Made by a program: the position numbers and the translations under genes. A stretch of DNA of 64,000 nucleotides, taken from the IMG/VR virus record IMGVR_UViG_3300046559_001153, positions 1 to 64,000 of that record. The stretch is one strand, 5' to 3'. Position 1 is the first letter of the stretch. Every line of letters begins with the position of its first letter. Shown here piece after piece: positions 1 through 26,826 of this stretch. Below the pieces are notes generated by a model. The model did no database searches, had not been told where the DNA came from, and was given only the letters and a program-made list of their open reading frames with translations.

Positions 1-792
1 GTCAGAGCAGCCCTGTGCGGATCGACCCCAGACAGGACCATGCTCAATTACAGATCCCGCCAACTGCTCGGGATGATTCACGATTCGCGTTATGCGAACT
101 ACGCTCTGCAATTCGACCCGCGGGTCACCTACTTGAACAGCACAGATCCGATTTTTTATCTGCCGTCGACCTACTCGCCTCAGATCGGAATGCAGACGTC
201 TCGACCCAGTTCAACCCTTTACGTGCTGGGCCAAGAGGATCCGCCAGACTCAGACGGAATCATGCGAGCACAGTGGACAGTTACTGTGACGCAAGAGTTG
301 GGACCACAGTTCGCAATAGAGCCCTCGCCTGTCGCGGCGATCACCCAACTCGGTTCTGCCGCACCTGGCATTATGGGCCGACAGTACGGCTCATTCGCCG
401 GGCGTGTGGGTGTTAGCATGGCGACTGTGGCCGTGACAAAACAACCAAACAGCAAACTGTGGCTTAACACGTACAATTTCATAAGTAACTTGTCTCAACC
501 GATCGCACTGGGCGACTCGGGGTACACCTTCCAATTTTACGGGCTGATCGGTGACACATGGAATGTTACGACTACCGCAACACCTAAGCGTTCGATCTGC
601 GACATGGTCAATATCCTGCAGTCCATGAGCCAGTCGACGTTGGCTGCCGTGTTTACGACGCAGTCGGAAGAGCCGTGGAACACCTACCGTAACTTGTGGG
701 AGTTGGCGCCTGAGACAAGCAATCGCATGATCGGCTTTTTGCTGGCCTACTTGCACCAGCTGGAACTACTCAGGGTGAACAGTGGCAGTTAG
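1..792 (+). CDS. Putative virion structural protein, 5'-truncated; carries TQLGSAAPGIMGRxYGS peptide
   Basis: Frame open from base 1 with no stop before ATG 40; overlaps next gene; lies in baseplate block. Confidence 0.6.
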   Translation, partial: VRAALCGSTPDRTMLNYRSRQLLGMIHDSRYANYALQFDPRVTYLNSTDPIFYLPSTYSPQIGMQTSRPSSTLYVLGQEDPPDSDGIMRAQWTVTVTQELGPQFAIEPSPVAAITQLGSAAPGIMGRQYGSFAGRVGVSMATVAVTKQPNSKLWLNTYNFISNLSQPIALGDSGYTFQFYGLIGDTWNVTTTATPKRSICDMVNILQSMSQSTLAAVFTTQSEEPWNTYRNLWELAPETSNRMIGFLLAYLHQLELLRVNSGS

Positions 793-2584: not shown

Positions 2585-3523
2585 ATGATCGCTCAGACAC
2601 TCGAGGGACGCATGTTGGCCATGTGCAATCTGGCCAAAGCCGTCAACGATTCTGACGAGACAACTACGGTCAGTGGCCCATGGGCAGAGGCTGCCGGGTT
2701 GCTGGGAACGACCGTGTCAATCGCCAGTGGAAGGGACAACATCAACGCGGCTCTTGTCGGCAAAATGGATATCGGTACGACGGTTGCGTTCCGCGGTACG
2801 ATCTCTGTGAATGATCACACACGACCGTGGAAGGAGAGGCTGCTCGACTGGATGCAGGACTTCGACGCCGTCCAGACAGACTGGAATGGGGTATTTGTGC
2901 ATTCAGGATTTGCCGAAGCAATAGATTCAATGTGGCCCACGGTTCAATCGCTTATTACCGACGATACCCCTGGCGTGTATTTCACTGGTCACAGCAAAGG
3001 CGGGGCAATGGCCACGCTCGCAGCAATTCAGTTTTACAGACTGACCGGCCGACCGTCACTCGTTACAACGTTTGGAGCAGCTCGCAGCGTAGGTGCCGCA
3101 TCGGCCAATAAGATATTCGGGATGCCAATCTCGATTCACCGATACGAGAATGCCGGCGACATTGTTCCATTGACACCGCCCTGCACGGAGATCGCCGAGC
3201 TGGCTGCCCAGGAACTGGGGCATCCGATCGGCGTCCTTGACTACGAGAGCATTGGGGATTTGAAATTCGTAAACAAGGAACGCACAGTTGATACCTGTTC
3301 AAAGTTCATCAGTCAATTTCGTCAGGGAGCCGCGTTGGCCGAGTTGATCCTGCATGGCAATATGGACGCAATCGTGGATGCCCATGCGATCGGCCTGGGC
3401 GGTGCGTACCAACAAGCAGTTGCACCGGAAGTAACAGGAATAGCCAATTCGCAGGTGGCCAGCCTGTTACAAGGCCGATCCGTCCCTCTTTTCTCGCTTA
3501 TTTCGAAGCAGTTCGATACTTAA
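2585..3523 (+). CDS. Class 3 lipase (alpha/beta hydrolase)
   Basis: VAFRGT, VHSGF, nucleophile elbow TGHSKGGAMA, TFGA, DIVP, late His. Confidence 0.9.
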   Translation: MIAQTLEGRMLAMCNLAKAVNDSDETTTVSGPWAEAAGLLGTTVSIASGRDNINAALVGKMDIGTTVAFRGTISVNDHTRPWKERLLDWMQDFDAVQTDWNGVFVHSGFAEAIDSMWPTVQSLITDDTPGVYFTGHSKGGAMATLAAIQFYRLTGRPSLVTTFGAARSVGAASANKIFGMPISIHRYENAGDIVPLTPPCTEIAELAAQELGHPIGVLDYESIGDLKFVNKERTVDTCSKFISQFRQGAALAELILHGNMDAIVDAHAIGLGGAYQQAVAPEVTGIANSQVASLLQGRSVPLFSLISKQFDT

Positions 3524-3540: not shown

Positions 3541-4275
3541 ATGCCCACTCCGACCGATTTTCTTGAACCTGCCTATCGCCCCGCGTGGGTAGCTTGGAAG
3601 ACAAAACCGTCTCAGCAGACCACGAGTCATCTGCTGGATACGATCCAGCCCGCGATCACCAAGGCTGTCACGTTGAACATCGGGCCGAAGAGCGACCCGG
3701 TTCTGGGCGGGCACGCCAAACTGTTGGCTCTGCAGGCGATGGAATCGTACGATCCGGCCCGGGCCAGCGTAGGAACGCATTTGACTCGAAATCTACAGCG
3801 GCTTAAACGGCTGAACGCCAGACAAGCTCAAGCCATCCCCATCCCCGAGCACTGGCTCATATCGCATCAAACAGTTCGACGGGCCGAGGATGAATTGAGC
3901 GAGGACCTGGGCCGGGCGCCGACCATGCAGGAAATTGCCAGCCATACGAAGTTACCCATCGAAAAGGTGCAGCAGTTTCGCGGTGCCATCTTCCCGGCGG
4001 CCGAGAGCGATCTGGCTGCGTCCGGCCAAAACTATGTGTCGTCATACGTGCCAGGAGTTCAGCCGGGTTCGACTGCGTGGACAGAGGCAGTTTACTCGGA
4101 CATGGATCCGATCAATCAAAAGATCATGGAACATTCTCTAGGTTTACACGGACAACCCCGTTTGCCTAATCACGAAATTGCCAAGTTGTTACGCTTGTCG
4201 CCAGGAGCCATCTCCCAACGCAAGGCTCGCATTCAACAAACACTGGATAAGGAGTCGGAGCTCTCTCCGTTCTAA
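3541..4275 (+). CDS. Phage sigma-70-family RNA polymerase sigma factor
   Basis: YDPARAS..THL (region 2), IPIPE, ELSEDLGRAPTMQEIA (region 3), EIAKLLRLSPGAISQRK HTH (region 4). Confidence 0.8.
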   Translation: MPTPTDFLEPAYRPAWVAWKTKPSQQTTSHLLDTIQPAITKAVTLNIGPKSDPVLGGHAKLLALQAMESYDPARASVGTHLTRNLQRLKRLNARQAQAIPIPEHWLISHQTVRRAEDELSEDLGRAPTMQEIASHTKLPIEKVQQFRGAIFPAAESDLAASGQNYVSSYVPGVQPGSTAWTEAVYSDMDPINQKIMEHSLGLHGQPRLPNHEIAKLLRLSPGAISQRKARIQQTLDKESELSPF

Positions 4276-9224: not shown

Positions 9225-9248
9225 CCCTGTTTGAGCATGGAGGCTCCG

Positions 9249-10133
9249 ATGACACGATTTATCGTCACGCTGTTAGTCTTGGCCAGTTGCAATGTGGCAG
9301 TGGCCAAAATCACGTTAAAGGAACTGGTCACCGGGTCCGAACCCGCGGCTGTTCAAACATCGATTTTTACTCCCAAAAAGAAGACTGCTGTTCCTGACAA
9401 CGTTCGCGTACGAATGCGAGCCTTCCTGGCAGCTGAAGCTTCTATCGTGTCTCTAAAGGCGTCGGCACCCGGGCCCAATCCGGCGCCTGCCCCCGACAAG
9501 AAAGGCGTTTGCACTTACTGTGACGGGAGTGGCAAATCAGGAGACGGCTTGAACGTCTGTGCCCATTGCGGTGGTTCGGGTAAAGAACCCAAGAGCATGA
9601 CGATGGAAGAAATGCTTGAGCAATTGGACATGAGGCTGGATACGAAATTGAGTGTAATGGCCAGCCAGCTACAATCCCAATTCAGGGGCCAGCTCGACGC
9701 GTTGAAGCCCAAGGAACTTCCCAAGCCGAAAGAACAGCCGAAGCCCAAAGTAGTGGCCATGCCCCACTACCCGGTTAGGGGCGGGTGGTGGACAGGGTGT
9801 CCCGACTGGCAGCATCTGACGCGCGGCGAGCATAATGGCAAATTTGACCAGACATGGTTGAGAAGCCTGTCGAACGCCGAGGTCCAATCGCTGCACAGTG
9901 ACGACCACGAAGGGCATGTGAAATGGGAATATGCGGTTCGTCCGCAGCCCGTTCAATCTGCACCTCCGGCGGCTGCTCCGCCCGCCCCGAAAGCCAAGCC
10001 GGCCGTCAAATTTTATTTTGCCCCGCAGCGTCGCGGTAACTGCCCTGGCGGTTTTTGCCCGGCGTCAATTCAGACGGTCGAGGTGACGGAAGAGCGTGGC
10101 TATGTTATCGTGGAGTCGTACGCTTCAAACTGA
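9249..10133 (+). CDS. Exported protein with DnaJ-type CxxCxGxG fingers and His-rich domain
   Basis: Signal peptide; CTYCDGSG and CAHCGGSG; HL..GEH..LHSDDHEG; CPGGFCP. Confidence 0.7.
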   Translation: MTRFIVTLLVLASCNVAVAKITLKELVTGSEPAAVQTSIFTPKKKTAVPDNVRVRMRAFLAAEASIVSLKASAPGPNPAPAPDKKGVCTYCDGSGKSGDGLNVCAHCGGSGKEPKSMTMEEMLEQLDMRLDTKLSVMASQLQSQFRGQLDALKPKELPKPKEQPKPKVVAMPHYPVRGGWWTGCPDWQHLTRGEHNGKFDQTWLRSLSNAEVQSLHSDDHEGHVKWEYAVRPQPVQSAPPAAAPPAPKAKPAVKFYFAPQRRGNCPGGFCPASIQTVEVTEERGYVIVESYASN

Positions 10134-14939: not shown

Positions 14940-15881
14940 ATGCCCATTGGAATAGTTAATCTCGAATTTCTGAATCACAACGCCGAGCGTCGGTATCCGT
15001 TGGCGTATGACGCAAGTGCTCAGGATGTGACGGGCACCTTCACGATCCCCGACGACTTCATGGTCGAACTGCGTCTGGCTGTAGACGCCAGCTGGGCTAT
15101 TTCGCCAGCCAACTTCTTCATCTCGCAGATTGGCGCATTCGCGACTGGCTATTCGATCGTTATCTCGTACATGTCCGGAACTACGGCAATCCCGATTGCG
15201 TCTGCCCTGGTCGCCGCTCCGACCTTCGCCAGGGGTCAGGTTTACCAACTGATCGGGAACAGCCAATTCCCGAATACGGCCGGCCAAATTGCCATCTGGA
15301 GCCTCGATTCGATAAACCTGCAGCCGCCCGGTCTGTGGACGTTTAATGCGACTGGGGCCAAGATCGACACCGACTGTGTCGTGCCCAGCCTGTCCGGCGT
15401 GACAAGCCTGGCTACGGTAAATGGATCCACAGTCAGTGCCGCCTACTCGGGGATTATCGAACTGGTAGCCGGGACAAACATTACCCTGGTTCCAACTGTG
15501 GTTGGTGGGATCACTACGATCCAAATCAACGCAATTGACGGGGCTGGTTTGAATTCGGAATGCGGCTGTGCCGGAGCCCCGGCTGTACCTATCACTCGTA
15601 TTAACGGGGTGCCGCCGACAGCTGCCGGCGACTTCACTCTTTTAGGTGACGACTGCTTACAAATCACAGCAATCGGGCACGGGTTACAATTGACGGACAG
15701 CTGCTCGCAACCGTGCTGTGGATGCCAGGAGCTGGCTGCCATTACGCAGGACCTCGAGCAGTTTGGCGCCGAGGCGACCACGTTGCAGACGTTCGTCAAT
15801 GCGTTGAGCGTATCTGTAAACCAAATGAACATGGTTGTCCTGGGTAGTCGTCTTTCAGATAACAGTTGCCAAGTTTGTTGA
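14940..15881 (+). CDS. Cys-rich tail-associated paralog 1
   Basis: EFLNHNAERRYPL; LVAGTNI; RINGVPPTAAGDF; CSQPCCGC then coiled coil. Confidence 0.6.
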   Translation: MPIGIVNLEFLNHNAERRYPLAYDASAQDVTGTFTIPDDFMVELRLAVDASWAISPANFFISQIGAFATGYSIVISYMSGTTAIPIASALVAAPTFARGQVYQLIGNSQFPNTAGQIAIWSLDSINLQPPGLWTFNATGAKIDTDCVVPSLSGVTSLATVNGSTVSAAYSGIIELVAGTNITLVPTVVGGITTIQINAIDGAGLNSECGCAGAPAVPITRINGVPPTAAGDFTLLGDDCLQITAIGHGLQLTDSCSQPCCGCQELAAITQDLEQFGAEATTLQTFVNALSVSVNQMNMVVLGSRLSDNSCQVC

Positions 15882-15887
15882 GATGAA

Positions 15888-17675
15888 ATGGCCGTCGACT
15901 ATCCTGTTAATCCCGTCGCCATGGATCAGGCTCCACTTGGTGGCACGAACTTTCCGTTCGTGGACACCTCGACGGGTCTGGAATTCCTCATTGCCGATCT
16001 CAACCTGACTTACTCTGACGACGCGTCTGTCTTCGCTTTACCGTTCCGACTCGACTGGCTGCACGGCTTCGGCTCGATGCCCCACTCGGCACCGAGTTTC
16101 GCGCCGACGCCTACCCACGCTCAGGATGTCTTAATCCGTGACGCCAACGAGCAGGTAGTATTCAGCTCTGCTACTGGCAGCTTCAACGTGACAGTCTGGA
16201 ATTCCAGCCTGACTGTTCTGACCTGGAAAACAGCGATGGGGGTTTTGTCGCTCGTCTGGGTTACACAATGGCCCAGCGGACCGACGGCCCCGAACTATTT
16301 CACGAATATCGCCTTCACAAACGTCAAACTTGATTTGCGTACCTGCCAGCGTCTGCCGCCGCATGTTACGGGCATCAAAATCGGCAGCACGGTCTACACA
16401 GGCCAGATTCAGCTGGCGGCCGGGTATAACATCAATCTCGAAAAGGTTGAACAAACGGGCTTTGATAGCGGTATCCAGAATGTGACGGCCCTGCAGATTG
16501 ATGCCGTTCCAGGCGCGGGCCTGGGTCAATTTTCAGACTGCACAGAGGCCAATGTCGTACTACGCAGGGTTAATGGCCAGAGCCCTGACAGCAATGGGAA
16601 TCTGCAGTTGGATCTCGCCGGCTGTTATCGATTGCAACTGGCCGGAGCCATAACGTCGACCAGCCCGCGTGTGTTCAAAACGACACTCGGAACGTTGCAA
16701 TTCAGCAACGACTGCGCCCCATGCTGCGATTGCCAGGACTACGTCAACACCTATCGAGGCCTGACGAACGTTTGGAACCAGTTCTACCAGATAGACGTGG
16801 ACGCTCACCAGGCAAGAGACCAGTTGCAGGCAAACATCGCGAGATGGGATTCACAAAAATCCTGTCGTGAGGCAACAGCGGTTCGTTTGTTAATGGTCCC
16901 GTTCTGTCCATGCCTGATCGGTGTGGTCGGATCGTACTGCAATATGACTGGGACCTGCCTGACAAATGTGACAATGACGTTCAACTTTTCCGGGCTGACC
17001 GAGCTGTCGCCGGACGTGATCTGTGGCCAGACTGTGATCAATAACGATCAGCAGTACGCATTGGCCGGGTCGTGGCCTCAGTATACGGCTTACTTCGACA
17101 ACGTCAGCGCTGGACAACGAGTTTCGGTTCAATTTGCGGTGGAGGCAAAAAACTGTCAGTCGTCTGAGCCGTTGACTGGAACACTCGGTGTTGCGTTCGG
17201 GGCGTCGTCAGCCACACCGCCGCCATCCGCCAGTCAGTCGATCTTGATGCTGGCGCCGGATGGAATCACCGGAGATTGTTGCGATCCCGGCGCAACTTTA
17301 GGGACGTCGTCTACGTCCTCCACGACGTCTAGTACTACTACGACTACCACCACTACCACGACCACAACTACCACCACTACCACGACCACAACTACCACCA
17401 CTACTACGACCACGACCACCACTACTACGACCACGACTACCACCACTACTACGACCACGACCACCACTACTACCACGACTACCACCACTACTACGACCAC
17501 CACTGGCACGTCCGGTACCGGATCGCACGTATGCCAGGCCGTCTGCTCGTGGATGTGGATGGGCGATACATGGTCCTTGCAATCTGGTTGTGAGGTCGGT
17601 TGCGGATGCGCGCCACCTGGAGCTTGTCCGGGCTGCTTTGTCGGCCAATTAGCCGGGTCGGACTGCCACAATTAA
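15888..17675 (+). CDS. Cys-rich tail-associated paralog 2 with poly-Thr stalk
   Basis: NFPF; LAAGYNI; RVNGQSPDSNGNL; CAPCCDC; 57 Thr; Cys/Trp C-terminal module. Confidence 0.65.
   Translation: MAVDYPVNPVAMDQAPLGGTNFPFVDTSTGLEFLIADLNLTYSDDASVFALPFRLDWLHGFGSMPHSAPSFAPTPTHAQDVLIRDANEQVVFSSATGSFNVTVWNSSLTVLTWKTAMGVLSLVWVTQWPSGPTAPNYFTNIAFTNVKLDLRTCQRLPPHVTGIKIGSTVYTGQIQLAAGYNINLEKVEQTGFDSGIQNVTALQIDAVPGAGLGQFSDCTEANVVLRRVNGQSPDSNGNLQLDLAGCYRLQLAGAITSTSPRVFKTTLGTLQFSNDCAPCCDCQDYVNTYRGLTNVWNQFYQIDVDAHQARDQLQANIARWDSQKSCREATAVRLLMVPFCPCLIGVVGSYCNMTGTCLTNVTMTFNFSGLTELSPDVICGQTVINNDQQYALAGSWPQYTAYFDNVSAGQRVSVQFAVEAKNCQSSEPLTGTLGVAFGASSATPPPSASQSILMLAPDGITGDCCDPGATLGTSSTSSTTSSTTTTTTTTTTTTTTTTTTTTTTTTTTTTTTTTTTTTTTTTTTTTTTTTTTTTTTTTTGTSGTGSHVCQAVCSWMWMGDTWSLQSGCEVGCGCAPPGACPGCFVGQLAGSDCHN
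17334..17504 (+). repeat. (ACN)57 tract encoding 57 consecutive threonines
   Basis: 171 nt of mixed ACT/ACC/ACG/ACA codons in frame. Confidence 0.95.
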
Positions 17676-17731: not shown

Positions 17732-19354
17732 ATGCCAACCTGGAATGAACACTGGTATGTAGCGAATCAGCAACGAGCTTACCCGCTTGCCGAGACAGCC
17801 ACACTGTTGTCTGACAACGGCGTCCAGCTGCCGCACGGGGTGCTTGTCGACGCGGTCATCCGCTTCCCGACATCGCTCGGAAATTGGCTGTTTTTGAGCT
17901 CAGTCACGATCACAGCCAATCTCGTCTCTTTGACGTTTCAAGCTGCCACATCGCTGAGCGGGCCCATGTCTCTGCTACCGGCGGCCGTGTTGTCGTTGCC
18001 CAAACCTATCGACATCTACCGGGTGATCGCCCTGCAAGCACAGTACCCAGGTGTTTACGGCTATGTCGTATTCGGGGAAGAAATCAACAATCTCGATTCG
18101 TTCTTCGGCCGATTTTCAACGCCTGGCCAGTCTGTGGTCGTTCCGAAGGCTGCCCGTCCTTATGCCGATTTGCCGATCTCGTCTGTTGGTGTTCCGGAAG
18201 CGGGATCGGGGCTTACCGGATTGGTCAAATTGACCGCTCAGGCCCCTCTCGAGATCGTCAAGGAAACTCGTGAAATCGACAACATCGTCCGAGACGCTGT
18301 CGTTATTCGGTTGGTCCAACCGATTGGCCAAGCTACGAACGTATTTCAACAGTTCACAGGCGCGTGTGGCGGCCGACCCGAAAGCAACACATGCAGCCAA
18401 TCAGCCGTCGAGTTTATCAACAATGTGGCGCCTGACTGCGCCGGAACGCTGACTCTCAAATTCGCCGGAGCGATCGACGTGGCAAGCACCACTCCGATTG
18501 TCGGGGCTGTGGTCGACGGCACGTACGGTCTGGCAGAAACCTGTTTGAATAAGAACCAGGTACCGACCGCGGACGGCAAATTGCCCAATCAATACCCGAA
18601 TCTCTGCAACCTGCTGGTTAGCAGCCAAAACCTGGAAGTCAGCTTGCCGCCATGGCCACCGGTCCAGACGCACGGACACTCGACGTTGCCTTACACGGAC
18701 GACTTTGACGCTTGCGTGGCTCGTGACTTTCTGATCATTCAAGGCGGCTGGACATTTACGAGCGACGATTCACCCGATCAGATGCTTTCAGAACCGCCAA
18801 ACGGCCCGTCGCAATGTCCCGTCGGTTCAACCGGGCACATGTCGCTGTCGACGGAGACAACGATTGGAGCCAGCGTTCGCAACATTGATGTCTGGACAGG
18901 CAACGGGCAGACGTCTGGTGTTGAGATCATCACAGACTTCAACGTTCAACAAGGGCCGATCGGCGCTTTGCACAACGCCGGGATCATTTTGAATTACAGG
19001 CCGCACCAGACGGATGCAGACCGGTACGTCTATTATCTGGTGCAGGTCGACTATGACGCACAAGCTTTGCAGCTGTGGTTCTTCAACGGTACGCAGTTCG
19101 TCTTGATCGGCTCTGTGCCGCTCGTGGGTATGCTCTTCGGCGTCTGGTACAGGGTCTTTGTCATAGTGCGGCCGGGGCTCGGTAGTGGGGTAACCATTCA
19201 AGCTCAAGTTCTATCGCTGATTGATGGGAGCATCAATGTGACTTTCGGACCAGTCGCGGTAAACAGTTATCTGCCGGCAACCGGTTACAATGGCCTTGAA
19301 TCTAACCGGTCGTTCACCCGTTTCTCATTTTGGCACGCCAACTCAGTAGCCTGA
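17732..19354 (+). CDS. Tail-associated paralog 3 with C-terminal lectin-like beta-sandwich
   Basis: WYVANQQRAYPL; FINNVAPDCAG; YTDDF...AGIILNY...YYLV...WYRV...G.NGL. Confidence 0.55.
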   Translation: MPTWNEHWYVANQQRAYPLAETATLLSDNGVQLPHGVLVDAVIRFPTSLGNWLFLSSVTITANLVSLTFQAATSLSGPMSLLPAAVLSLPKPIDIYRVIALQAQYPGVYGYVVFGEEINNLDSFFGRFSTPGQSVVVPKAARPYADLPISSVGVPEAGSGLTGLVKLTAQAPLEIVKETREIDNIVRDAVVIRLVQPIGQATNVFQQFTGACGGRPESNTCSQSAVEFINNVAPDCAGTLTLKFAGAIDVASTTPIVGAVVDGTYGLAETCLNKNQVPTADGKLPNQYPNLCNLLVSSQNLEVSLPPWPPVQTHGHSTLPYTDDFDACVARDFLIIQGGWTFTSDDSPDQMLSEPPNGPSQCPVGSTGHMSLSTETTIGASVRNIDVWTGNGQTSGVEIITDFNVQQGPIGALHNAGIILNYRPHQTDADRYVYYLVQVDYDAQALQLWFFNGTQFVLIGSVPLVGMLFGVWYRVFVIVRPGLGSGVTIQAQVLSLIDGSINVTFGPVAVNSYLPATGYNGLESNRSFTRFSFWHANSVA

Positions 19355-19357
19355 CCA

Positions 19358-20152
19358 ATGCCCGAATTTACAATAGTTCCGGAATGGCGTGACGACCAGC
19401 AGGCGACCGGCTGGCCGTTCAGCTTGGACGTGAAACCAAGCAACCAGGCTGGGTACTTCATCCCCGACTCGACATTCTTGGACGCCGCCTTTTACCCGGT
19501 TGGCGGGACTGTCGGTCTGTACATCTCGAGTATCGCCGTAGCCAGCGGGCTCGTCACGATTACGGTGAGCGACTCGGGAATTAACGGACTGGCCACCGGC
19601 AGTTTCTCCTTGTTAAACCCGCCGAGCTTGATTGACTTCTTCGACTCTTTCGGGCGACCGGCAGGCGTAATCGTTTCAGACCCGACACGATTGGCAGTTT
19701 TTCAGGCCTGGGCAACCGGCACACAGACTTTCACAGCCGACCAGACAGAGTTCGTTGCGACCGTGTATCAGCCGTCGCCTGAGATCGGCTTCAGAGGATT
19801 TGTTCTAGCCGACGGAAGCCTGGTGACAGGCGATATCTGGCTGGTTGGTGATGACGGCGTAGTCGTTAGGAATGACCCGGGCAATCCGGAACCGGTCATC
19901 CGTGTCGATGCGGTCGGTGATCCGTTGTTCGCTCGCCGGTTGTGCCAGCCAGACAATTTGTTTGTTACCCCGCGGTACGTCCAACAGATCAAAGTCATCT
20001 CTGGCAACGGGACATTCACGGTGACGCCCGATCAAACAGGAAATTTCGAAATCAGCGTCGGTAGCAATCTGGCAACAGATGTCGCTTTGCGGGTCCGAAC
20101 GACCAATTCGGGGCTCGTTTTCGAGGTAATGGGATCGAGCTCTGCTGTCTGA
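19358..20152 (+). CDS. Tail-associated paralog 4
   Basis: EWRDDQQATGWPF; IPD..FLDA; LVGDDGV; PDQTGNF. Confidence 0.55.
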   Translation: MPEFTIVPEWRDDQQATGWPFSLDVKPSNQAGYFIPDSTFLDAAFYPVGGTVGLYISSIAVASGLVTITVSDSGINGLATGSFSLLNPPSLIDFFDSFGRPAGVIVSDPTRLAVFQAWATGTQTFTADQTEFVATVYQPSPEIGFRGFVLADGSLVTGDIWLVGDDGVVVRNDPGNPEPVIRVDAVGDPLFARRLCQPDNLFVTPRYVQQIKVISGNGTFTVTPDQTGNFEISVGSNLATDVALRVRTTNSGLVFEVMGSSSAV

Positions 20153-20222: not shown

Positions 20223-20783
20223 ATGTTCACCCGATTGTCTTTGCTTAGTTCGATTGTTGTTGGATGTTTGACCGCGACAATTTTTGCGAAAGTTGAAAAG
20301 GAATCCAAAATCGACTGTCCCTGTAAAAATCAGCCGTACTGGAAAGCGGTTGTCGACGGGATCAGCGACAACGGACAGGTGGTCTCCGGGAGCTGCGGAT
20401 CGTACAACGGAACGTACGTCGTCGGACCCGTGGTAGAAGAGACGCAACGCTGGGATTACACGTGCGGTCCTCGAGGCGGAGCCACCTGCAGTTTCAGCGG
20501 CATTGAAGAATCGAAAGCCGTTCTTCAGTGGTATCCTGAAAAATACGACGTCAAAGATTCGGCCGGCCGATTGATTCCCAACGGTCTAGGCGGAGTTTGG
20601 GTTTTGACCATTACAGCCCCGAATGCCACTTTGTATCTGGCAGGCTCGGACTGGCGCTGCGACGGGTCAAATGTTATGCAAGCGGTCGTGTCTGACAATA
20701 CTGGCTGCTGCTCGTGCGGATCGATCAAGGCAACAGTCAGCCCGACATCGACGGACTGCCGCGGTCGGAAGCTTCGAATTTGA
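20223..20783 (+). CDS. Exported Cys-rich protein (moron-like insertion)
   Basis: Signal peptide, about 11 Cys, own GAGG SD and own terminator. Confidence 0.65.
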   Translation: MFTRLSLLSSIVVGCLTATIFAKVEKESKIDCPCKNQPYWKAVVDGISDNGQVVSGSCGSYNGTYVVGPVVEETQRWDYTCGPRGGATCSFSGIEESKAVLQWYPEKYDVKDSAGRLIPNGLGGVWVLTITAPNATLYLAGSDWRCDGSNVMQAVVSDNTGCCSCGSIKATVSPTSTDCRGRKLRI

Positions 20784-20785
20784 TT

Positions 20786-20820
20786 GTTTCCCGGGCCATA
20801 TTGGCCCGGGGCATTTTTTT
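20786..20820 (+). terminator. Intrinsic terminator
   Basis: CCCGGGCCA-TAT-TGGCCCGGG followed by T7. Confidence 0.8.
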
Positions 20821-20835
20821 AGCTATCGTGGTTCT

Positions 20836-23800
20836 ATGCCTAGACCAGACTGGTACAACGAGAACAGCTATCGATCCTTTCCGTTCTTGAAAGGATTGAC
20901 GGGTGTGGCTGTAGACCCGTTGTTGGTGCTGTCAGGGCCATCGCCGGGCCGCGGACTCACCCAGTTGGGCTCGGCCGCCCCGGGGATCATGGGCCGCCCT
21001 TACGGGTCATCCGGGTCTTCCAGCCTGCTGACACTGGCCAATCTGCCGGAAGCGACCATCGTTGATTTCGGGTGCGTGATCGGGTACGCCTCGTCTTATG
21101 ACCCGATGATCGATTCGGTTTTCCTGTACAAGATCACCCGCGTCGGCAGCCTGTTCACATTCGAATTCCGTTCCTCGGCCATGTCTCTGGACGGTATTCC
21201 TCTGATCTTCACGCGGAGCCTGTCAGACCCGCAAATGAGTGTGGAGTACACCGACAGTGACGGTTTACCCCAGTCTCTCACCAGCACGACATCCTTGACC
21301 GGCCCATGCCCAACGGAACCAGCCTGGACAGGCTTTATCGTCACAGGTGATTTGACCGCTTTAGCTGCTATCTTGCTGTCCGGCCAGACTCTGACCGGAC
21401 CAACCGGACCATACTTGCAGGTCGAGCCGTCGACCGTGATCGACCAGTTTCAACACACGGCCTGGGCGATCAACCTGGCCAATGACGACCGCACTCGAGC
21501 CACAGGGTCATCAGGGTGTTCCGATCCAGTCTGGGATTATCCGGCCGGAACAACGCTCGTACAGCAGACGTGTTTGCAGGGCCGAGTCCTGCTCATGGCC
21601 GGATTCAATGTCATTGCGACGCAGATCGACTTTGCCAATGAAATCCAATTGTCGGCATCCCCGGGGGTCGGAGTAGTCGGCAATTGCGGGGACCTGGCTT
21701 TGTTCCCAGGCGAAAAGCCGCCAACGGGGTCAGCCCTGCTTGACGGCGCGGTAGGTTGTGATCAAGTGCTGACGACCATCAATGGGATTGCCGGTCCACG
21801 AATCGACTTTCACGGTGGAGCAGGTGTGACCGTCACGTCCTCACCGAGCACCAATACCGTTCTGATCAACGTGAACATGAACGATGTCGGTAATGTGTGC
21901 AATCGTTTCGAGGGCGGAGGAACTACTCTCATCACATCGATCAGCAGTATTGGCGTCCCATCAATATCGAGCATCAGCACAGCCGGGCCGCTCGGCTGCT
22001 TATCGAACACAATTCAACGTCTGGATATGTTCCAGCTCGCGACCCTGGATCCAGCGGCCACTTACCGATTGTCTCTGTACAACCACACGACATCGCTGCT
22101 TCACGGCAACTCGACCGCTGCGACGATCCAGGCGGCCATCCAAGCCTTGCCCAACGTGGGAGTCGGTAATTGCCTGCTGCTACCGCAAAATACTGGAGAT
22201 TTCGTTAATGCCGGAAGTGGCGGGTTTCTGTTCTTCACCGGAGCACTGGCTGGCGAAGCCGTACCGCTCGCGCAAGTCATTGGGTGGAACGGCGCACATC
22301 CAGGCCCGGTCGTCACGATGATGTACCCCGGCGAATTGGCGAACCCGGATGACATCCAGCTGTTCAATTTTTCCAATCCGCCACCGGGCATGTTGTTTAC
22401 TGTCACGTTTAAGGGTTTCTCGACGGCGCCGATTGCCGTTGTGAATAACGTCGGCGGGCCGAGGCAGGGAACCATCCTGCAACACGCCCTGGAAAGTCTT
22501 CCGTCGATCGGGCTGGGCAACGTGTTCGTCCAGGGACAGAATGACGGAGATAATCAGCCTGTTGACGGATTCTTCGTGCATTTCATGAACGCACTCGGCG
22601 GTGTTCGTCAGCCGCTTCTGTCGATCAACGCAGTACCGGGCACTCAGGTCATAATGAACCATCTGGTTCCAGCCTGCATGCTGAAAGGCCACATAGGCCC
22701 GACCAGTTCGAGTGTCAGTCTCAGCTTGCGAGACAGAGACGACTGCCTGACATCGAGCATACAACGGCTGGATCTCTTTCAGCTTCCCAGTACACAGCCG
22801 ACTGCCACCTACTTCTTCGTGCTGGGAACGCATCATTCCGCCTACATCTCTGCCAGTGCGACGGCTCTCGAGATTCAAAACGCCCTGCAAGCGATACACG
22901 GTGTGGGGCTCGGGTGCTGCCTAGTGTACCCACAAAACGTCGGCGATCCGATCAACGATAAAATGGGCGGGTTTATCGTATTCACCGGCGGACTAACCGG
23001 GCTCGACATGCCGACACTCGAGGTCGAGGGGTGGACCGGCACCGGGACTGGCCCTGTTGTCACGTCGATGATGACGGGCGGATTGCTCGGCATCGATGAC
23101 GTCCAGTTGTTCAACCTGGTTCGCCCGGCGGTTGGCACTACGTTTACAGCAACGCTGAACGGCCAGACAACCGCGGCGATCGGTGCGTATAACAATCCAA
23201 GCGGACCTGACCAGGGAGTGGCCCTGCAGGCTGCACTGGAAGCTTTGCCGACCATCGGGCCGGGCAATGTCCTCGTGCAGGCACAAAATCAAACTTCCAG
23301 CCATTCTGTCGACGGATTCTACGTTCAGTTCATTGGCTCACTGGCTCAGAAACGGCAGAATCTGCTTCAGATCACGCCCACACCCAGTACGGGAGTTTCG
23401 ATCGTCAGGTTAACCGAGGCCTGCTTTGCAAACAGCAGCAGCATCGCTCCTATCCCTCACGGGCTATCGGATACGATCCAGATCTACGGGCCGACCAATT
23501 TCAATCTGCAGGGATCGCACTTCTCCATGCAGTTTGTGCTCGGAGGGTCGACCTCGCCCACGGTGACGAATGTGCCGATGACCCCGAACGCCTTGCAACT
23601 CATTCTCGAATCACTACCAAGTGTGGGTCCCGGCAATGTGGCTGTTTACGGGCAGTCAGAATACCCCAATCAAGAGTCCAACATATTCGTCATTCACTTC
23701 ACAGGCGACTTGGCCGGGACGGACGTGCCCTTGCTGCAAGCCCAATCGTCCCTGCCTGGCAACTCGTTAGTTGCGGAGTGCCGAGTGGTTCAACACGGTG

Positions 23801-24738
23801 GCATGACAACCAGTGACGATTTTCAGTGGGTTGATTTCCGTATCCCGACAGGCCAACCTTTCGGCAATAACACCATCACTTACGGCGGGCATACGACAGT
23901 GAATATCCCGATTGGCAGTACGGGAACCCCGACCGTGGACGGATTGGGTCCGCAGATCCGTACGGCAATGCAGGCCCTATCGTCGATCGGTTTCGGTAAT
24001 TGCCAGATTTATGCCGGTGAGTACCCGACCAGCTCATTCCAATTCACGGATGGATTTCTGGCGAGATTCACCGGCTGCCTGTCCGGCACACCGGCGCTGG
24101 CCATCACAGCAACAACCTATGCGGGGCCCGGTGCGCTGATCACCAGGATTGTCCCTGGATTCGGCGGCAGTAGTCCCGATGCAAACCCGGTTAGCCTGTA
24201 TCCAATTGCGGCGTGGCCGTCTGGTGCGTTTGTTTCGAACGACGTAAATGTGACCCTGAATCGATTCGTCTCGGGCACGTTATTTCCGTCGCCGCCGGCC
24301 GACACGTTCGACCTGCTCGGGCCGGTTGGCGGTGGAAGTTGTGGCGTCGTCGCCGCTAACATTACCAAGACGCCTGACGCGGTTACGTCGATCTCGTTTT
24401 CGATGTACTACGCACTCGGATGTTTGCCGACGGCTTTCATTTCAGCTTCTCACGTCACGGCCGTCTTTGGTGTTTGCAACTACATCTACACGTGGACCAT
24501 CTCGGTCGAAGTCGAAACAAGCCCAGGCGTCTACACGGCGATCTGGTCAGTCAGCGGTATCGTACCACCGAACACTAATCCTGGCGTCTTGACCTACCCC
24601 ATGACGCTGATCAACCCGTCCCTGAACACCCGCCCCAATTGGCAGAACGCCCGACTCAACCTATCCGCAACAGGCACCAGTGTGCCGTCCAGCACAGAGA
24701 CTGAGGTGTACCAGGCCTACGTGAAGGTGTATTACTGA
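20836..24738 (+). CDS. Large tail-fiber-like paralog 5 with six ALEALPxIGxGNV-type repeats
   Basis: Start re-set to MPRPDWYNENSYRSFPF after terminator; repeats IQAAIQALPNVGVGN, LQHALESLPSIGLGNV, IQNALQAIHGVGLG, LQAALEALPTIGPGNV, LQLILESLPSVGPGNV, IRTAMQALSSIGFGN. Confidence 0.7.
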   Translation: MPRPDWYNENSYRSFPFLKGLTGVAVDPLLVLSGPSPGRGLTQLGSAAPGIMGRPYGSSGSSSLLTLANLPEATIVDFGCVIGYASSYDPMIDSVFLYKITRVGSLFTFEFRSSAMSLDGIPLIFTRSLSDPQMSVEYTDSDGLPQSLTSTTSLTGPCPTEPAWTGFIVTGDLTALAAILLSGQTLTGPTGPYLQVEPSTVIDQFQHTAWAINLANDDRTRATGSSGCSDPVWDYPAGTTLVQQTCLQGRVLLMAGFNVIATQIDFANEIQLSASPGVGVVGNCGDLALFPGEKPPTGSALLDGAVGCDQVLTTINGIAGPRIDFHGGAGVTVTSSPSTNTVLINVNMNDVGNVCNRFEGGGTTLITSISSIGVPSISSISTAGPLGCLSNTIQRLDMFQLATLDPAATYRLSLYNHTTSLLHGNSTAATIQAAIQALPNVGVGNCLLLPQNTGDFVNAGSGGFLFFTGALAGEAVPLAQVIGWNGAHPGPVVTMMYPGELANPDDIQLFNFSNPPPGMLFTVTFKGFSTAPIAVVNNVGGPRQGTILQHALESLPSIGLGNVFVQGQNDGDNQPVDGFFVHFMNALGGVRQPLLSINAVPGTQVIMNHLVPACMLKGHIGPTSSSVSLSLRDRDDCLTSSIQRLDLFQLPSTQPTATYFFVLGTHHSAYISASATALEIQNALQAIHGVGLGCCLVYPQNVGDPINDKMGGFIVFTGGLTGLDMPTLEVEGWTGTGTGPVVTSMMTGGLLGIDDVQLFNLVRPAVGTTFTATLNGQTTAAIGAYNNPSGPDQGVALQAALEALPTIGPGNVLVQAQNQTSSHSVDGFYVQFIGSLAQKRQNLLQITPTPSTGVSIVRLTEACFANSSSIAPIPHGLSDTIQIYGPTNFNLQGSHFSMQFVLGGSTSPTVTNVPMTPNALQLILESLPSVGPGNVAVYGQSEYPNQESNIFVIHFTGDLAGTDVPLLQAQSSLPGNSLVAECRVVQHGGMTTSDDFQWVDFRIPTGQPFGNNTITYGGHTTVNIPIGSTGTPTVDGLGPQIRTAMQALSSIGFGNCQIYAGEYPTSSFQFTDGFLARFTGCLSGTPALAITATTYAGPGALITRIVPGFGGSSPDANPVSLYPIAAWPSGAFVSNDVNVTLNRFVSGTLFPSPPADTFDLLGPVGGGSCGVVAANITKTPDAVTSISFSMYYALGCLPTAFISASHVTAVFGVCNYIYTWTISVEVETSPGVYTAIWSVSGIVPPNTNPGVLTYPMTLINPSLNTRPNWQNARLNLSATGTSVPSSTETEVYQAYVKVYY

Positions 24739-24744
24739 GATCGA

Positions 24745-26826
24745 ATGAGTCAGACCCCCAAAAGATTTTTACTGGTCCATCGACGAGCCGTCGGCGACAC
24801 GGTTGTCATGACGGGCGTGATCCGGGATTTGAAGCTGACTTACCCGTCGATCCCCATCCACGTGTATTCGAATTACCGGGATGTCTGGCTCAACAACCCG
24901 CACATCGAGAGCTTTGATCGAAACGAAGTACCGGGGGCGGAGCGACATTCTCTGTGCTACTCGCGATCCATCAACATCGCCGAGAAGGGCACGAGATTGC
25001 ATTTCCTGGGCGCCTTCCATCAGGACTTCACAGTCAAAGCCGGCGTCCCGGTTGAACTGCTGTATCCAACCCCCGACCTGCATCTGTCGCCGGACGAGCT
25101 CGTTCCGCCGCTTGACCGTCGATACTGGGTTGTTCTGGCTGGTGGCAAGTCGGACGTTACGATCAAGCATTGGGACTACAGCTGGTACCAGCAGACGGTC
25201 GACCTGTTGTCGGACTACGGGATCCCGTGCGTTCAGGCGGGCTCGGTCGAACGCGGTCACACGCATGAGCCGTTGAACGGGGTTCTCAATCTGGTCGGAC
25301 AGACCAATCTCCGGTCATTCATGCGGTTGATCTATCACGCAGACGGGGTGATATGCCCAGTCACATCGGCCATGCACATTGCCGCGGCCTTCAACCGGCC
25401 CGCGGTGGTTATCGCCGGCGGCCGGGAAGCCTGGTGGTGGGAGGCCTATCGCCGCGAGAATCAGGGCCTCGGGAAAAATCACGAACTGCTCCCCGTATCG
25501 CACGCTTACTTGCATACAATTGGTTTATTGCCCTGCTGTCAGGACAAGGGGTGTTGGCGTGCACTGGTTAATCCAATCACGCCGGAAGACTTCACGTCAA
25601 AACGAATGAAGACGATGTGTCGAGACGTCGTCAAAGAACCAGGTCGTCAGATCTTGCCACGCTGCATGGCCATGATCACCCCACAGCATGTTGTTTCCGA
25701 GGTCCTCATGTACTACGAAAAAGGCGTTCTTCCTCCGATCGGGCAGGCAAGACAACTGCCCCCCATTCCTGGAGTTGGCCATGCGATTCACCAACCGGCC
25801 CAAACGGCTGCGGCACCCCTACTTCTACCCGGTACGCTGCCGGGACAAATCTCGACTCCCAATGACACCGCACAATTACAGGCCCCGCAAATTCTGGGAC
25901 TGGCCCCGGACACGCAGGCAGGCGGAGCAGGACTTCTACGCTTAAATCCGCCGGTCGTTACGGATGCGAGACTGATCAAACCGCAACCAACGGTGTCGGC
26001 GATCCGATTGACGGTTCCTGTTCAGGCCGTACTCGAGCAAGCCGCATCAATCCTCGACCATCCGATCGTCGGTGGCAAATTTACGATCTGCACTTTGGCT
26101 TACGGTAAATTCCCCCACCTGATCAAACGGTGTATCAGCTCGATTCTGGAGTCTGTGCCGCGGAGCCGACTCGATCTACGGATTGGCGCCAACGCCTGTT
26201 GCGACGAAACGCTGGAGTACATCAATAGCCCTGAGGTGGGGGCGACCAAGGTCTACAACCACCCGGAGAACGCTTACAAGTACCCTGTAATGCACGAGAT
26301 GTTTCATGACGCTAGCTGCCCGATCCGATCGAACTATCTGGTCTGGTTCGACGACGACAGTTACGTAGTCAAAACGTCCTGGCTGACCGACCTGGCTCAG
26401 GCCATCATTGAGAACCACAATCACAAGGTGGGCATGTACGGGATCAAATTCATCCACGATATCAAGTCGTTTGCTCGAAACGGACACGATCCTCGCCAGT
26501 GGTTCCAACAGGCAACCTGGTGGAGAGGCCGTCCGTTCCAGACGTCTGGCGGCGGTGAGGCGCCCAATGCGACGGCCATCCACTTCGTCTCCGGCGGCTT
26601 CTGGGCGATCTACACGCCGCTGATCAAACAGGCTGACATTCCGGACATCCGCCTCAGAAACAACGGTGATATGCAGCTGGGGGCTGCCTGCCACCAGCAC
26701 GGTTACAAGATTCGCGATTTCAACCGGAACAAGACCCACGTATACTCATCCGGAGCGGCCAGACGCGGCGTCCAGCACAATTTCCCGTGGTCACACGAAC
26801 AGCCCTACGAACGCCTCATCAGTTGA
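24745..26826 (+). CDS. Bifunctional glycosyltransferase: GT9 (heptosyltransferase-like) plus GT-A/GT2-like
   Basis: AVGDTV, K.W, LVGQTNL..ADGVI...TSAMHIAAAF..P; Pro/Gln linker; WFDDDS DxD motif. Confidence 0.8.
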   Translation: MSQTPKRFLLVHRRAVGDTVVMTGVIRDLKLTYPSIPIHVYSNYRDVWLNNPHIESFDRNEVPGAERHSLCYSRSINIAEKGTRLHFLGAFHQDFTVKAGVPVELLYPTPDLHLSPDELVPPLDRRYWVVLAGGKSDVTIKHWDYSWYQQTVDLLSDYGIPCVQAGSVERGHTHEPLNGVLNLVGQTNLRSFMRLIYHADGVICPVTSAMHIAAAFNRPAVVIAGGREAWWWEAYRRENQGLGKNHELLPVSHAYLHTIGLLPCCQDKGCWRALVNPITPEDFTSKRMKTMCRDVVKEPGRQILPRCMAMITPQHVVSEVLMYYEKGVLPPIGQARQLPPIPGVGHAIHQPAQTAAAPLLLPGTLPGQISTPNDTAQLQAPQILGLAPDTQAGGAGLLRLNPPVVTDARLIKPQPTVSAIRLTVPVQAVLEQAASILDHPIVGGKFTICTLAYGKFPHLIKRCISSILESVPRSRLDLRIGANACCDETLEYINSPEVGATKVYNHPENAYKYPVMHEMFHDASCPIRSNYLVWFDDDSYVVKTSWLTDLAQAIIENHNHKVGMYGIKFIHDIKSFARNGHDPRQWFQQATWWRGRPFQTSGGGEAPNATAIHFVSGGFWAIYTPLIKQADIPDIRLRNNGDMQLGAACHQHGYKIRDFNRNKTHVYSSGAARRGVQHNFPWSHEQPYERLIS

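What the first reader, a model, noticed from the sequence alone, without database searches (positions are those of the whole stretch)
343..393. 17-aa peptide TQLGSAAPGIMGRxYGS shared by two distant virion proteins (second copy 20959-21009)
Seen: 16 of 17 residues are identical, yet 10 codons differ synonymously, so the conservation is at protein level and not a recent DNA duplication. Both copies follow PSP-x3-[IL]. In the 20836 protein it lies between the N-terminal W..N.R.FPF motif and the LP..IVD motif, which are closer together in its paralogs, so it looks like an inserted loop. Inference: a portable docking peptide that recruits a common partner (decoration or fiber protein) or a modifying enzyme.
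Basis: partly seen in the sequence, partly recalled or inferred. Interest (0 to 1): 0.68.

Follow-up and report, generated by a model that had tools for sequence, protein, structure and literature searches.

The report
Shared docking peptide in phage tail proteins
An uncultured 224-kb phage carries the same 15-residue peptide four times, in exposed inserted loops of a baseplate-module protein and a giant fibre-like protein and twice in an unannotated 74-residue protein, which looks like a portable tag for joining virion parts, though its binding partner is unknown.

Summary
The core T-Q-L-G-S-A-A-P-G-I-M-G-R-x-Y occurs four times in the 224,270-bp circular phage genome. The two reported copies are at window 343-393 and 20959-21009. 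Two more lie in tandem in an unannotated 74-aa ORF (genome 209696-209920, = L001:5426-5650).

The copies differ at 8-12 of 45 bases. Every difference is synonymous except in codon 14 (pS 0.49-0.83, pN 0-0.06). The three carrier proteins are otherwise unrelated.

In the 306-aa baseplate-module protein the peptide sits in a 41-residue insertion at a beta-hairpin tip. 114 of 139 aligned homologues have 8 residues where this protein has 49. AlphaFold2 models the insertion as a low-confidence loop on an otherwise confident fold.

In the 1300-aa fibre-like protein the peptide sits in a ~44-residue insertion in an N-terminal motif region shared with three neighbouring genes; this is supported more weakly.

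The peptide was not found in any other phage or genome searched. A syntenic relative lacks the insertion and the mini-protein.

Best reading: a portable, exposed assembly or docking tag, with the two-copy mini-protein as a bivalent connector. No partner was identified, and the one complex prediction gave no answer. Main rival: a recognition tag for one of three glycosyltransferases encoded among the structural genes.

The parts
343..393 (+). Peptide copy 1 (TQLGSAAPGIMGRQYGS), residues 158-174 of the 306-aa baseplate-module protein P0004
295..417 (+). 41-residue insertion (P0004 residues ~142-182) that carries copy 1, between beta strands 132-140 and 184-191. Modelled as a loop with pLDDT 51-62.
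   Evidence: 114 of 139 homologues have 8 residues where P0004 has 49; AlphaFold2 model
1..792 (+). 3' part of the gene for P0004 (306 aa). The gene starts at genome 224015 (L001:19745) and crosses the junction of the circular assembly. It belongs to an uncharacterised family of ~260-aa proteins encoded between a 1067-aa protein (possibly the tape measure, unconfirmed) and the baseplate wedge gene.
20959..21009 (+). Peptide copy 2 (TQLGSAAPGIMGRPYGS), residues 42-58 of the 1300-aa fibre-like protein P0002
20908..21039 (+). ~44-residue insertion (P0002 residues ~25-68) between the N-terminal W..N..R.FPF motif and the LP..IVD motif
   Evidence: motif spacing 53 against 13-14 residues; profile score 8.9 -> 16.6 bits on deletion, peaking at this position
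20836..24738 (+). Gene for P0002 (1300 aa), with internal repeats and no family match. It is the last and largest of four genes that share the N-terminal motif.
14940..15881 (+). Motif-sharing gene (313 aa) without the insertion
17732..19354 (+). Motif-sharing gene (540 aa) without the insertion
19358..20152 (+). Motif-sharing gene (264 aa) without the insertion
24745..26826 (+). 693-aa glycosyltransferase (GT9 heptosyltransferase-like plus GT2) directly after P0002. Candidate reader under the rival 'modification tag' model.
   Evidence: Pfam PF01075 at 41.7 bits, above its cut-off of 22; NCBIfam heptosyltransferase models match only weakly

Best explanation
The 15-residue core [L/I]-TQLGSAAPGIMGR-x-Y is a portable, surface-exposed protein-recognition tag (a short linear motif) used in building the tail end of the virion.

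Shown:
- Four copies in three unrelated proteins are held invariant while synonymous sites are near saturation.
- In the baseplate-module protein the tag sits in a lineage-specific ~41-residue insertion. The carrying insertion in the fibre-like protein is ~44 residues but is supported more weakly.
- In the baseplate-module protein the tag lies on a floppy loop at a beta-hairpin tip that also tolerates other insertions in homologues.
- A third carrier is a 74-aa protein. It consists of two tags joined by a proline-rich spacer, followed by a short basic tail, and its gene is tightly packed between two structural-region genes.

Inferred:
- The tag folds on binding, possibly as a hairpin (ITQLG / turn SAAPG / IMGRxY), into one common binding site.
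- This couples the giant fibre-like protein, the baseplate protein and whatever the mini-protein bridges.
- Two sub-models remain open. (a) A separate, still unidentified reader protein, such as a fibre, decoration or adaptor from one of the lineage-specific cassettes, binds every copy. (b) The tags pair with each other, and the two-copy mini-protein links the one tag on the baseplate protein to the one tag on the fibre.
For: - Four copies, pS 0.49-0.83 against pN 0-0.06, with all non-synonymous change in codon 14.
- No other similarity between the carriers.
- P0004: 1034 homologues, typically 256-270 aa. 114 of 139 have 8 residues where P0004 has 49. Other members have unrelated insertions at the same hairpin (25 aa in P0137, ~125 aa in P0034).
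- AlphaFold2 model: mean pLDDT 90, but 51-62 across residues 141-180.
- P0002: insertion supported by motif spacing and profile scores.
- Mini-ORF: its two internal copies differ by 8 synonymous base changes, which supports translation in this frame. Its ATG lies 4 nt after the upstream stop, and its stop overlaps the next start (GTGA).
- Structural context: tail sheath (phrog_279), baseplate proteins (phrog_975, phrog_6) and major head protein (phrog_2522).
- A syntenic relative (28-54% protein identity across the module) lacks the insertion, the mini-ORF and several neighbouring cassettes, so the system is a lineage-specific gain.
- Precedent: short conserved peptides attach receptor-binding proteins to T4gp10-like domains in K1-5/SP6/KP32-type phages (PMC6872550).
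Against: - No binding partner was found.
- The single complex prediction (class-3 lipase, 303-aa and 239-aa neighbours against the mini-protein) scored ipSAE 0.00. The tool rates this as no answer.
- No relative carries the peptide, so there is no co-occurrence or covariation evidence.
- That the carriers are virion components rests on gene order only.
- The P0002 N-terminal model is unusable (pLDDT 34), so exposure is shown for one carrier only.
- Strict invariance of an exposed peptide fits an enzyme recognition site equally well.
Confidence: 0.5

Rival explanations
1. Modification tag. The peptide is the recognition and acceptor site of a phage enzyme, most plausibly one of the glycosyltransferases encoded among the structural genes. 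That enzyme would glycosylate a Ser, Thr or Tyr of the tag on all three carriers.
For: - Three glycosyltransferase genes sit inside the structural region. The 693-aa GT9+GT2 directly follows P0002. A 644-aa GT2 (27.2 bits against a cut-off of 23.3) lies in a lineage-specific cassette that the relative lacks. A 404-aa protein matches GT2 and methyltransferase models below their cut-offs.
- The tag has T, S and Y on an exposed loop.
Against: - The 404-aa enzyme is conserved in the relative that lacks the peptide.
- The glycosyltransferases have a more obvious substrate: a run of about 58 threonines in the 595-aa fibre-cluster protein.
- Known sequons are much shorter and looser than 14 invariant residues (general knowledge).
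- No similarity to solved protein- or peptide-glycosyltransferases was found.
Confidence: 0.17
2. Host-directed motif. The exposed tag binds a host surface or periplasmic component, as an adhesion loop or a mimic of a host peptide. It is displayed on the fibre, on the baseplate and on a small released or virion-bound protein.
For: It is exposed on tail-end proteins. The mini-protein has a basic C-terminal tail.
Against: - The pattern L-G-x-A-A-P-G-x-M-G-R-x-Y matched one contig in 185,579 species genomes and two in JGI metagenomes, all the same out-of-frame, arginine-rich reading of a bacterial sequence. So there is no sign of host mimicry.
- Receptor-binding elements of phages usually vary fast, whereas this one is invariant across copies (general knowledge).
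Confidence: 0.1
3. Processing site. The tag is the recognition site of a phage or host protease that trims the carriers during assembly.
For: It is an exposed flexible loop. A subtilisin-like peptidase is encoded near the baseplate genes of one relative (L023).
Against: - No protease was seen near any copy in this genome.
- Cutting inside a hairpin loop of a folded baseplate domain, or inside an N-terminal anchor region, would nick or detach the protein.
- Cleavage motifs are normally a few residues long (general knowledge).
Confidence: 0.05
4. No present function. The copies are remnants of a small inserted DNA element whose sequence happens to be retained.
For: The insertions are of similar size (41-44 residues) and share short flanks, PSP...[IL] before and YGS after.
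Against: pS 0.49-0.83 with pN ~0 cannot arise without purifying selection on the protein. There is no DNA similarity outside the core.
Confidence: 0.02

Closest known systems
Conserved N-terminal docking peptides of receptor-binding proteins (K1-5/K1E/SP6 hepta- and undecapeptides; KP32, KP34, Menlow and phiK64-1 groups), which attach to T4gp10-like domains of an anchor or adaptor protein (PMC6872550)
   Same: A short, conserved peptide on otherwise unrelated tail proteins is thought to plug them into the virion. It is specific to a phage group and can be very short.
   Different: - Those peptides sit at the extreme N-terminus and are conserved between phages, and each protein has its own peptide and site.
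- Here one identical peptide is repeated within a single genome.
- It lies in internal inserted loops of a baseplate protein and of a fibre's anchor region.
- It also forms a free two-copy mini-protein.
- No T4gp10-like domain was detected.
Capsid-targeting sequence of phage T4 internal proteins (own knowledge, not tested here)
   Same: One short peptide shared by several unrelated proteins of a single phage directs them to one assembly site.
   Different: The T4 signal is N-terminal, targets the head interior and is cut off by the prohead protease. Here the carriers lie in the tail and baseplate gene modules and the tag is internal.
Encapsulin cargo-loading peptides (own knowledge, not tested here)
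   Same: A portable ~10-15-residue Gly/Ala/Leu-rich peptide on a flexible linker is enough to dock unrelated cargo to one binding groove.
   Different: Those peptides are usually C-terminal and bind the inside of an HK97-fold shell. Nothing links this tag to the capsid protein.
Eukaryotic and viral short linear motifs, for example loop-displayed motifs such as the adenovirus penton RGD (own knowledge)
   Same: Short, disordered, loop-displayed, gained independently in unrelated proteins, and conserved against diverged flanks.
   Different: Typical linear motifs have 3-6 fixed positions.

Membership tests
Uncharacterised ~260-aa baseplate-module protein family (carrier P0004) | Sequence homology over the N-terminal and C-terminal helical parts and the central beta domain | tested here: met
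   phmmer: 1034 homologues at E<=0.001 and 27 at E<=1e-30; alignments A2 and A3
Uncharacterised ~260-aa baseplate-module protein family (carrier P0004) | Conserved gene position between the 197-aa gene and the ~555-597-aa gene, upstream of the gp6-like wedge gene | tested here: met
   Same gene order in L015, L018, L019 and L023
RBP conserved-peptide / T4gp10-like anchor-branch docking | Docking peptide at the extreme N-terminus of the attached protein | tested here: not met
   Residues 158-174 of 306 and 42-58 of 1300, both in internal insertions. Only the first copy in the mini-protein is near an N-terminus, at residue 5.
RBP conserved-peptide / T4gp10-like anchor-branch docking | A T4gp10-like receiving domain in an anchor or adaptor protein | tested here: inconclusive
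   No Pfam, PHROG or NCBIfam hit of that kind in the tail genes scanned. No structure-based test was possible.
RBP conserved-peptide / T4gp10-like anchor-branch docking | Peptide conserved across related phages while the rest of the protein varies | tested here: not met
   The peptide was found in no other phage or metagenome contig. Relatives lack it.
T4-type capsid-targeting sequence | N-terminal peptide on internal head proteins, removed by the prohead protease | tested here: not met
   The position is internal, and the carriers lie in the baseplate, fibre and pre-sheath gene regions.
Short linear motif (generic class) | Lies in a disordered or flexible region | tested here: met
   pLDDT 51-62 across P0004 residues 141-180 against >=84 elsewhere. 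P0002 is not assessable.
Short linear motif (generic class) | Conserved relative to its flanks and present in unrelated proteins | tested here: met
Short linear motif (generic class) | A defined binding domain that reads the motif | tested here: inconclusive
   One multi-candidate complex prediction, ipSAE 0.00, rated 'no answer'
Protein glycosylation sequon | Cognate glycosyltransferase encoded nearby | tested here: met
   GT9+GT2 directly downstream of P0002, and a GT2 in a lineage-specific cassette
Protein glycosylation sequon | Covalent glycan on the peptide | not testable with these tools
   Needs mass spectrometry

The most novel reading that the evidence does not exclude
The phage has evolved a general 'plug' for virion construction. 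A 15-residue tag can be grafted into any exposed loop to attach that protein to a common socket, or to another copy of itself. A dedicated 74-aa two-tag protein acts as a bivalent coupler between tagged parts. This would be a natural, genetically portable, non-covalent tag-and-catcher system that works within one virus particle.
Probability: 0.3. Interest if true: 0.78.

Novelty: new variant of a known kind. Interest (0 to 1): 0.62.

Why it matters
Phage tails are usually thought to be assembled through folded domains or N-terminal anchor peptides. Here one invariant peptide is reused four times within a genome: grafted into loops of unrelated scaffolds, and doubled in a mini-protein. That would be a compact and transferable assembly code.

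It would also explain how large phages add extra fibres or enzymes without remodelling conserved baseplate proteins.

The case also shows that a functional 74-aa gene was missed by every gene caller. It was found only through the repeated peptide.

Tried and rejected
- Complex prediction: class-3 lipase, 303-aa and 239-aa neighbours against the 74-aa mini-protein gave ipSAE 0.00 in both runs. The tool's verdict is 'no answer', so it is evidence neither for nor against binding (the first attempt failed because the machine was busy).
- Searches with the mini-protein against GenBank phages, IMG/VR and 5.8 billion protein clusters: nothing.
- Searches with P0001/P0004 against GenBank phages and IMG/VR: nothing. 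The word search found only the protein itself, and its cluster members are fragments of the same phage.
- P0002 residues 1-340 in the word search: nothing.
- Degenerate DNA patterns for the peptide. IMG/VR gave 0 hits for two patterns and 7 chance hits for a looser one. The JGI metagenome and species-genome hits (L002-L004) are an out-of-frame, arginine-rich reading of a bacterial sequence.
- Fold of P0004. Foldseek against PDB and BFVD, and the Atlas shape search, gave nothing convincing. VIA-align shows only that the central beta domain resembles the FlgK/FlgL/FliD beta domains (Z 10.1-8.1). The profile against PDB sequences found nothing.
- Language-model look-alikes of the 239-aa and 303-aa neighbours: only unnamed viral clusters.
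- Single-sequence AlphaFold2 of P0002 residues 1-330: pLDDT 34, unusable.
- Programmed frameshift joining the 303-aa ORF to the mini-ORF: considered unlikely. The upstream stop codon precedes the A-run, and only 15 codons of the mini-ORF's frame are open upstream.
- DNA- or RNA-level element: rejected, because the copies differ at 8-12 of 45 bases and show no similarity outside the core.
- Similar shared peptides in relatives' loci: none.
There is therefore no expression or population-variant evidence.
- MAFFT alignment A1 placed the insert against paralog strands. This was judged to be an alignment artefact after the deletion scan.

Full report
**1. Check of the observation**

Window 343-393 and 20959-21009 both lie in frame 1 of the + strand. 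They translate to TQLGSAAPGIMGRQYGS and TQLGSAAPGIMGRPYGS. Ten codons differ synonymously and one differs non-synonymously. Both copies are preceded by P-S-P-x3-[I/L].

BLASTP between the two proteins finds only this 22-residue stretch (E 8e-07) and nothing else.

**2. The genome and two more copies**

The window is the first 64 kb of a single 224,270-bp contig with 55.5% G+C. Its last 127 bases repeat its first 127, so it is a circular assembly.

A six-frame scan of the whole genome finds two more copies, at 209708-209758 and 209807-209857. Both lie in one 74-aa ORF (L001:5426-5650). Its layout is:
- four N-terminal residues;
- tag 1;
- an 18-residue proline-rich spacer;
- tag 2;
- a 22-residue tail that ends in a basic cluster.

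Its ATG lies 4 nt after the stop of a 303-aa ORF, and its stop overlaps the GTG of a 239-aa ORF. No gene caller annotated it in any of the independent assemblies. It is complete and base-identical in five of them and truncated at a locus end in a sixth.

A 7-mer scan of the whole genome (output partly cut off) showed no other long peptide shared between distant loci.

**3. Selection**

Over the 15-codon core the six pairs of copies differ at 8-12 of 45 bases.
- pS is 0.49-0.83 and pN is 0-0.06.
- Every non-synonymous difference falls in codon 14, which reads Q, P, Q and R in the four copies.
- When the same number of changes was placed at random, <=1 amino-acid change resulted in <=0.0002 of trials.
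- There is no DNA similarity outside the core.

The four copies are therefore old, or have been recoded, and are held by strong selection on the protein. The two copies inside the mini-ORF show the same pattern, which is good evidence that the ORF is translated.

**4. Carrier 1: the 306-aa baseplate-module protein**

The window starts inside this gene. The full protein is P0004 (306 aa). It starts at genome 224015 and is present in at least 21 contigs from one set of samples. The tag is residues 158-174.

An exhaustive phmmer search finds 1034 homologues, mostly 256-270 aa. In an alignment of 139 members, 114 have 8 residues where P0004 has 49. That is a 41-residue insertion between two strands.

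Other members have unrelated insertions at the same point, 25 aa in P0137 and ~125 aa in P0034. The closest relative (P0011, 55% identity) lacks the whole central domain.

AlphaFold2 run with this alignment gives mean pLDDT 90 and pTM 0.84. Residues 141-180 drop to 51-62 and have almost no secondary structure; they lie between strands 132-140 and 184-191. The tag is therefore on a floppy loop at a hairpin tip that tolerates insertions.

The family has no Pfam, PHROG or PDB sequence relative. Its central domain resembles the beta domains of FlgK, FlgL and FliD (Z 10.1-8.1), which says nothing about function.

Gene order places the family in the baseplate module. Upstream lie the tail sheath (phrog_279), a probable tube gene, a 1067-aa protein and a 197-aa protein. 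Downstream lie a 597-aa protein, a baseplate protein (phrog_975) and a gp6-like wedge (phrog_6). The same order is seen in relatives.

**5. Carrier 2: the 1300-aa protein**

P0002 (window 20836-24738) has no family match and no detectable homologue.

Its N-terminus shares a motif pattern with three genes just upstream, of 313, 540 and 264 aa. The pattern is W..N..R.[FY]P[FL], then [LI]P...[IVL].[DE], then a hydrophobic strand pair. The first two motifs are 13-14 residues apart in those three genes and 53 apart in P0002.

BLASTP and hhalign are not significant on their own. However, the score of P0002 against a profile of the three N-termini rises from 8.9 to 16.6 bits when residues 25-68 are removed. 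The gain peaks at that position, with one lesser peak of 14.0 bits at residue 120.

The 'inserted loop' reading is therefore supported, but less firmly than for P0004. A single-sequence model of this region is unusable.

**6. Comparison with relatives**

A relative at 28-54% protein identity across the module (loci L015, L018 and L019) is collinear from the head-proximal genes through sheath, tube and baseplate wedge. It lacks:
- the P0004 insertion;
- the mini-ORF;
- the cassette at genome 202407-210636 that holds the mini-ORF (1403, 104, 565, 303, 74 and 239 aa);
- a second cassette (536 aa, 205 aa and a 644-aa GT2);
- the class-3 lipase in the baseplate module;
- the genes between the wedge gene and window 10948.

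No locus from a relative shows an analogous shared peptide.

The peptide was not found in:
- GenBank phages;
- IMG/VR;
- JGI metagenomes, apart from chance out-of-frame matches;
- 185,579 species genomes, apart from one such chance match;
- the 5.8-billion-cluster protein set, within the length windows searched.

Cultured phages are only remotely related: the sheath is 28% identical over half its length to those of ~180-kb Vibrio and Salmonella phages.

**7. How it probably works**

An exposed peptide with 14 of 15 positions fixed, grafted independently into two unrelated scaffolds and doubled in a mini-protein, is best explained as a recognition tag read by one binding site. I favour a structural docking role in tail assembly, for three reasons:
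- all carriers lie among structural genes;
- the mini-protein (two tags, a stiff proline-rich spacer and a basic tail) looks like a bivalent connector rather than a substrate;
- short peptides are already thought to attach receptor-binding proteins in other phages (PMC6872550).

Two sub-models remain. In the first, a separate reader binds every copy. In the second, the tags pair with one another, so that the two tags of the mini-protein link the single tag on the baseplate protein to the single tag on the fibre.

The main rival is an enzyme recognition tag. Three glycosyltransferases are encoded among the structural genes. One directly follows P0002 and one sits in a lineage-specific cassette. 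Against this, the enzymes have a more obvious substrate in a run of about 58 threonines in a neighbouring fibre-cluster protein. One of them is also conserved in the relative that has no tag.

The single complex prediction available to me gave no answer.

**8. Comparison with what is known, and novelty**

The closest known systems are:
- the N-terminal 'conserved peptides' of branched receptor-binding complexes;
- the T4 capsid-targeting sequence;
- encapsulin cargo-loading peptides.

This case differs from all three. The same peptide is repeated within one genome, it sits in internal inserted loops, and it also forms a free two-copy mini-protein. It meets the generic criteria of a short linear motif, but its reader is unknown. 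I rate it a new variant of a known kind.

**9. Limits**

- No binding, modification, expression or virion-presence data exist.
- 'Virion protein' is inferred from synteny.

Noticed in passing
window 17300-17500 (in the 595-aa ORF at 15888-17675): A run of about 58 consecutive threonines, encoded by an imperfect 21-45-nt tandem repeat, followed by a cysteine-rich C-terminal domain. It looks like a mucin-like linker and a likely substrate for the phage glycosyltransferases.
   Followed up: partly
window 24745-26826; genome 199392-201326 (L020:13392-15326); genome 195771-196985 (L020:9771-10985): Three glycosyltransferase-type genes are embedded among head, neck and tail genes: GT9+GT2 (693 aa), GT2 (644 aa), and a 404-aa protein that matches GT2 and methyltransferase models below their cut-offs. 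This suggests virion or host-surface glycan chemistry.
   Followed up: partly
window 2585-3523: A class-3 lipase/esterase (Pfam Lipase_3, 60.9 bits) is inserted in the baseplate module between two conserved genes. It is absent from the syntenic relative.
   Followed up: partly
window 3541-4275: A 244-aa protein with Sigma-70 region 3 (34.8 bits) and helix-turn-helix matches is encoded in the middle of the baseplate genes. It is conserved at the same position in relatives (L015 and L023).
   Followed up: no
window 20223-20830: A 186-aa ORF just upstream of P0002 begins with a signal-peptide-like stretch that ends in V-V-G-C (lipobox-like). It is followed by a G+C-rich hairpin and a T-run (about 20793-20823) that looks like an intrinsic terminator directly before the P0002 start.
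   Followed up: no
window 9231-10133: A 300-aa ORF with an N-terminal hydrophobic leader and a weak DnaJ-type CXXCXGXG zinc-finger match (18.7 bits, below the cut-off). It lies in a region that the relative lacks.
   Followed up: no
window 1-127 and genome 224144-224270: The contig ends repeat each other over 127 bases (a circular assembly overlap). The gene that carries peptide copy 1 crosses this junction, so it appears 5'-truncated in the window.
   Followed up: yes
window 21900-24200 (within P0002): P0002 contains several internal repeats that each start with a motif like S-I-Q-R-L-D-x-F-Q-L and contain A-L-x-x-L-P-x-[IV]-G-x-G-N (read from the translation). They suggest a modular fibre shaft or binding array.
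   Followed up: no
genome 124187-124425 (outside the window): A short tandem peptide repeat (units such as C-S-D-C-S-R-C-S in one frame, E-Q-S-E-Q-R-E on the other strand) turned up in the 7-mer scan. Its coding frame was not determined.
   Followed up: no
genome 202407-206618 (L021:407-4618): A 1403-aa ORF with no family match heads the lineage-specific cassette that also holds the 565-aa, 303-aa, 74-aa and 239-aa genes, between the head genes and the sheath gene. It may be a neck or head fibre.
   Followed up: no
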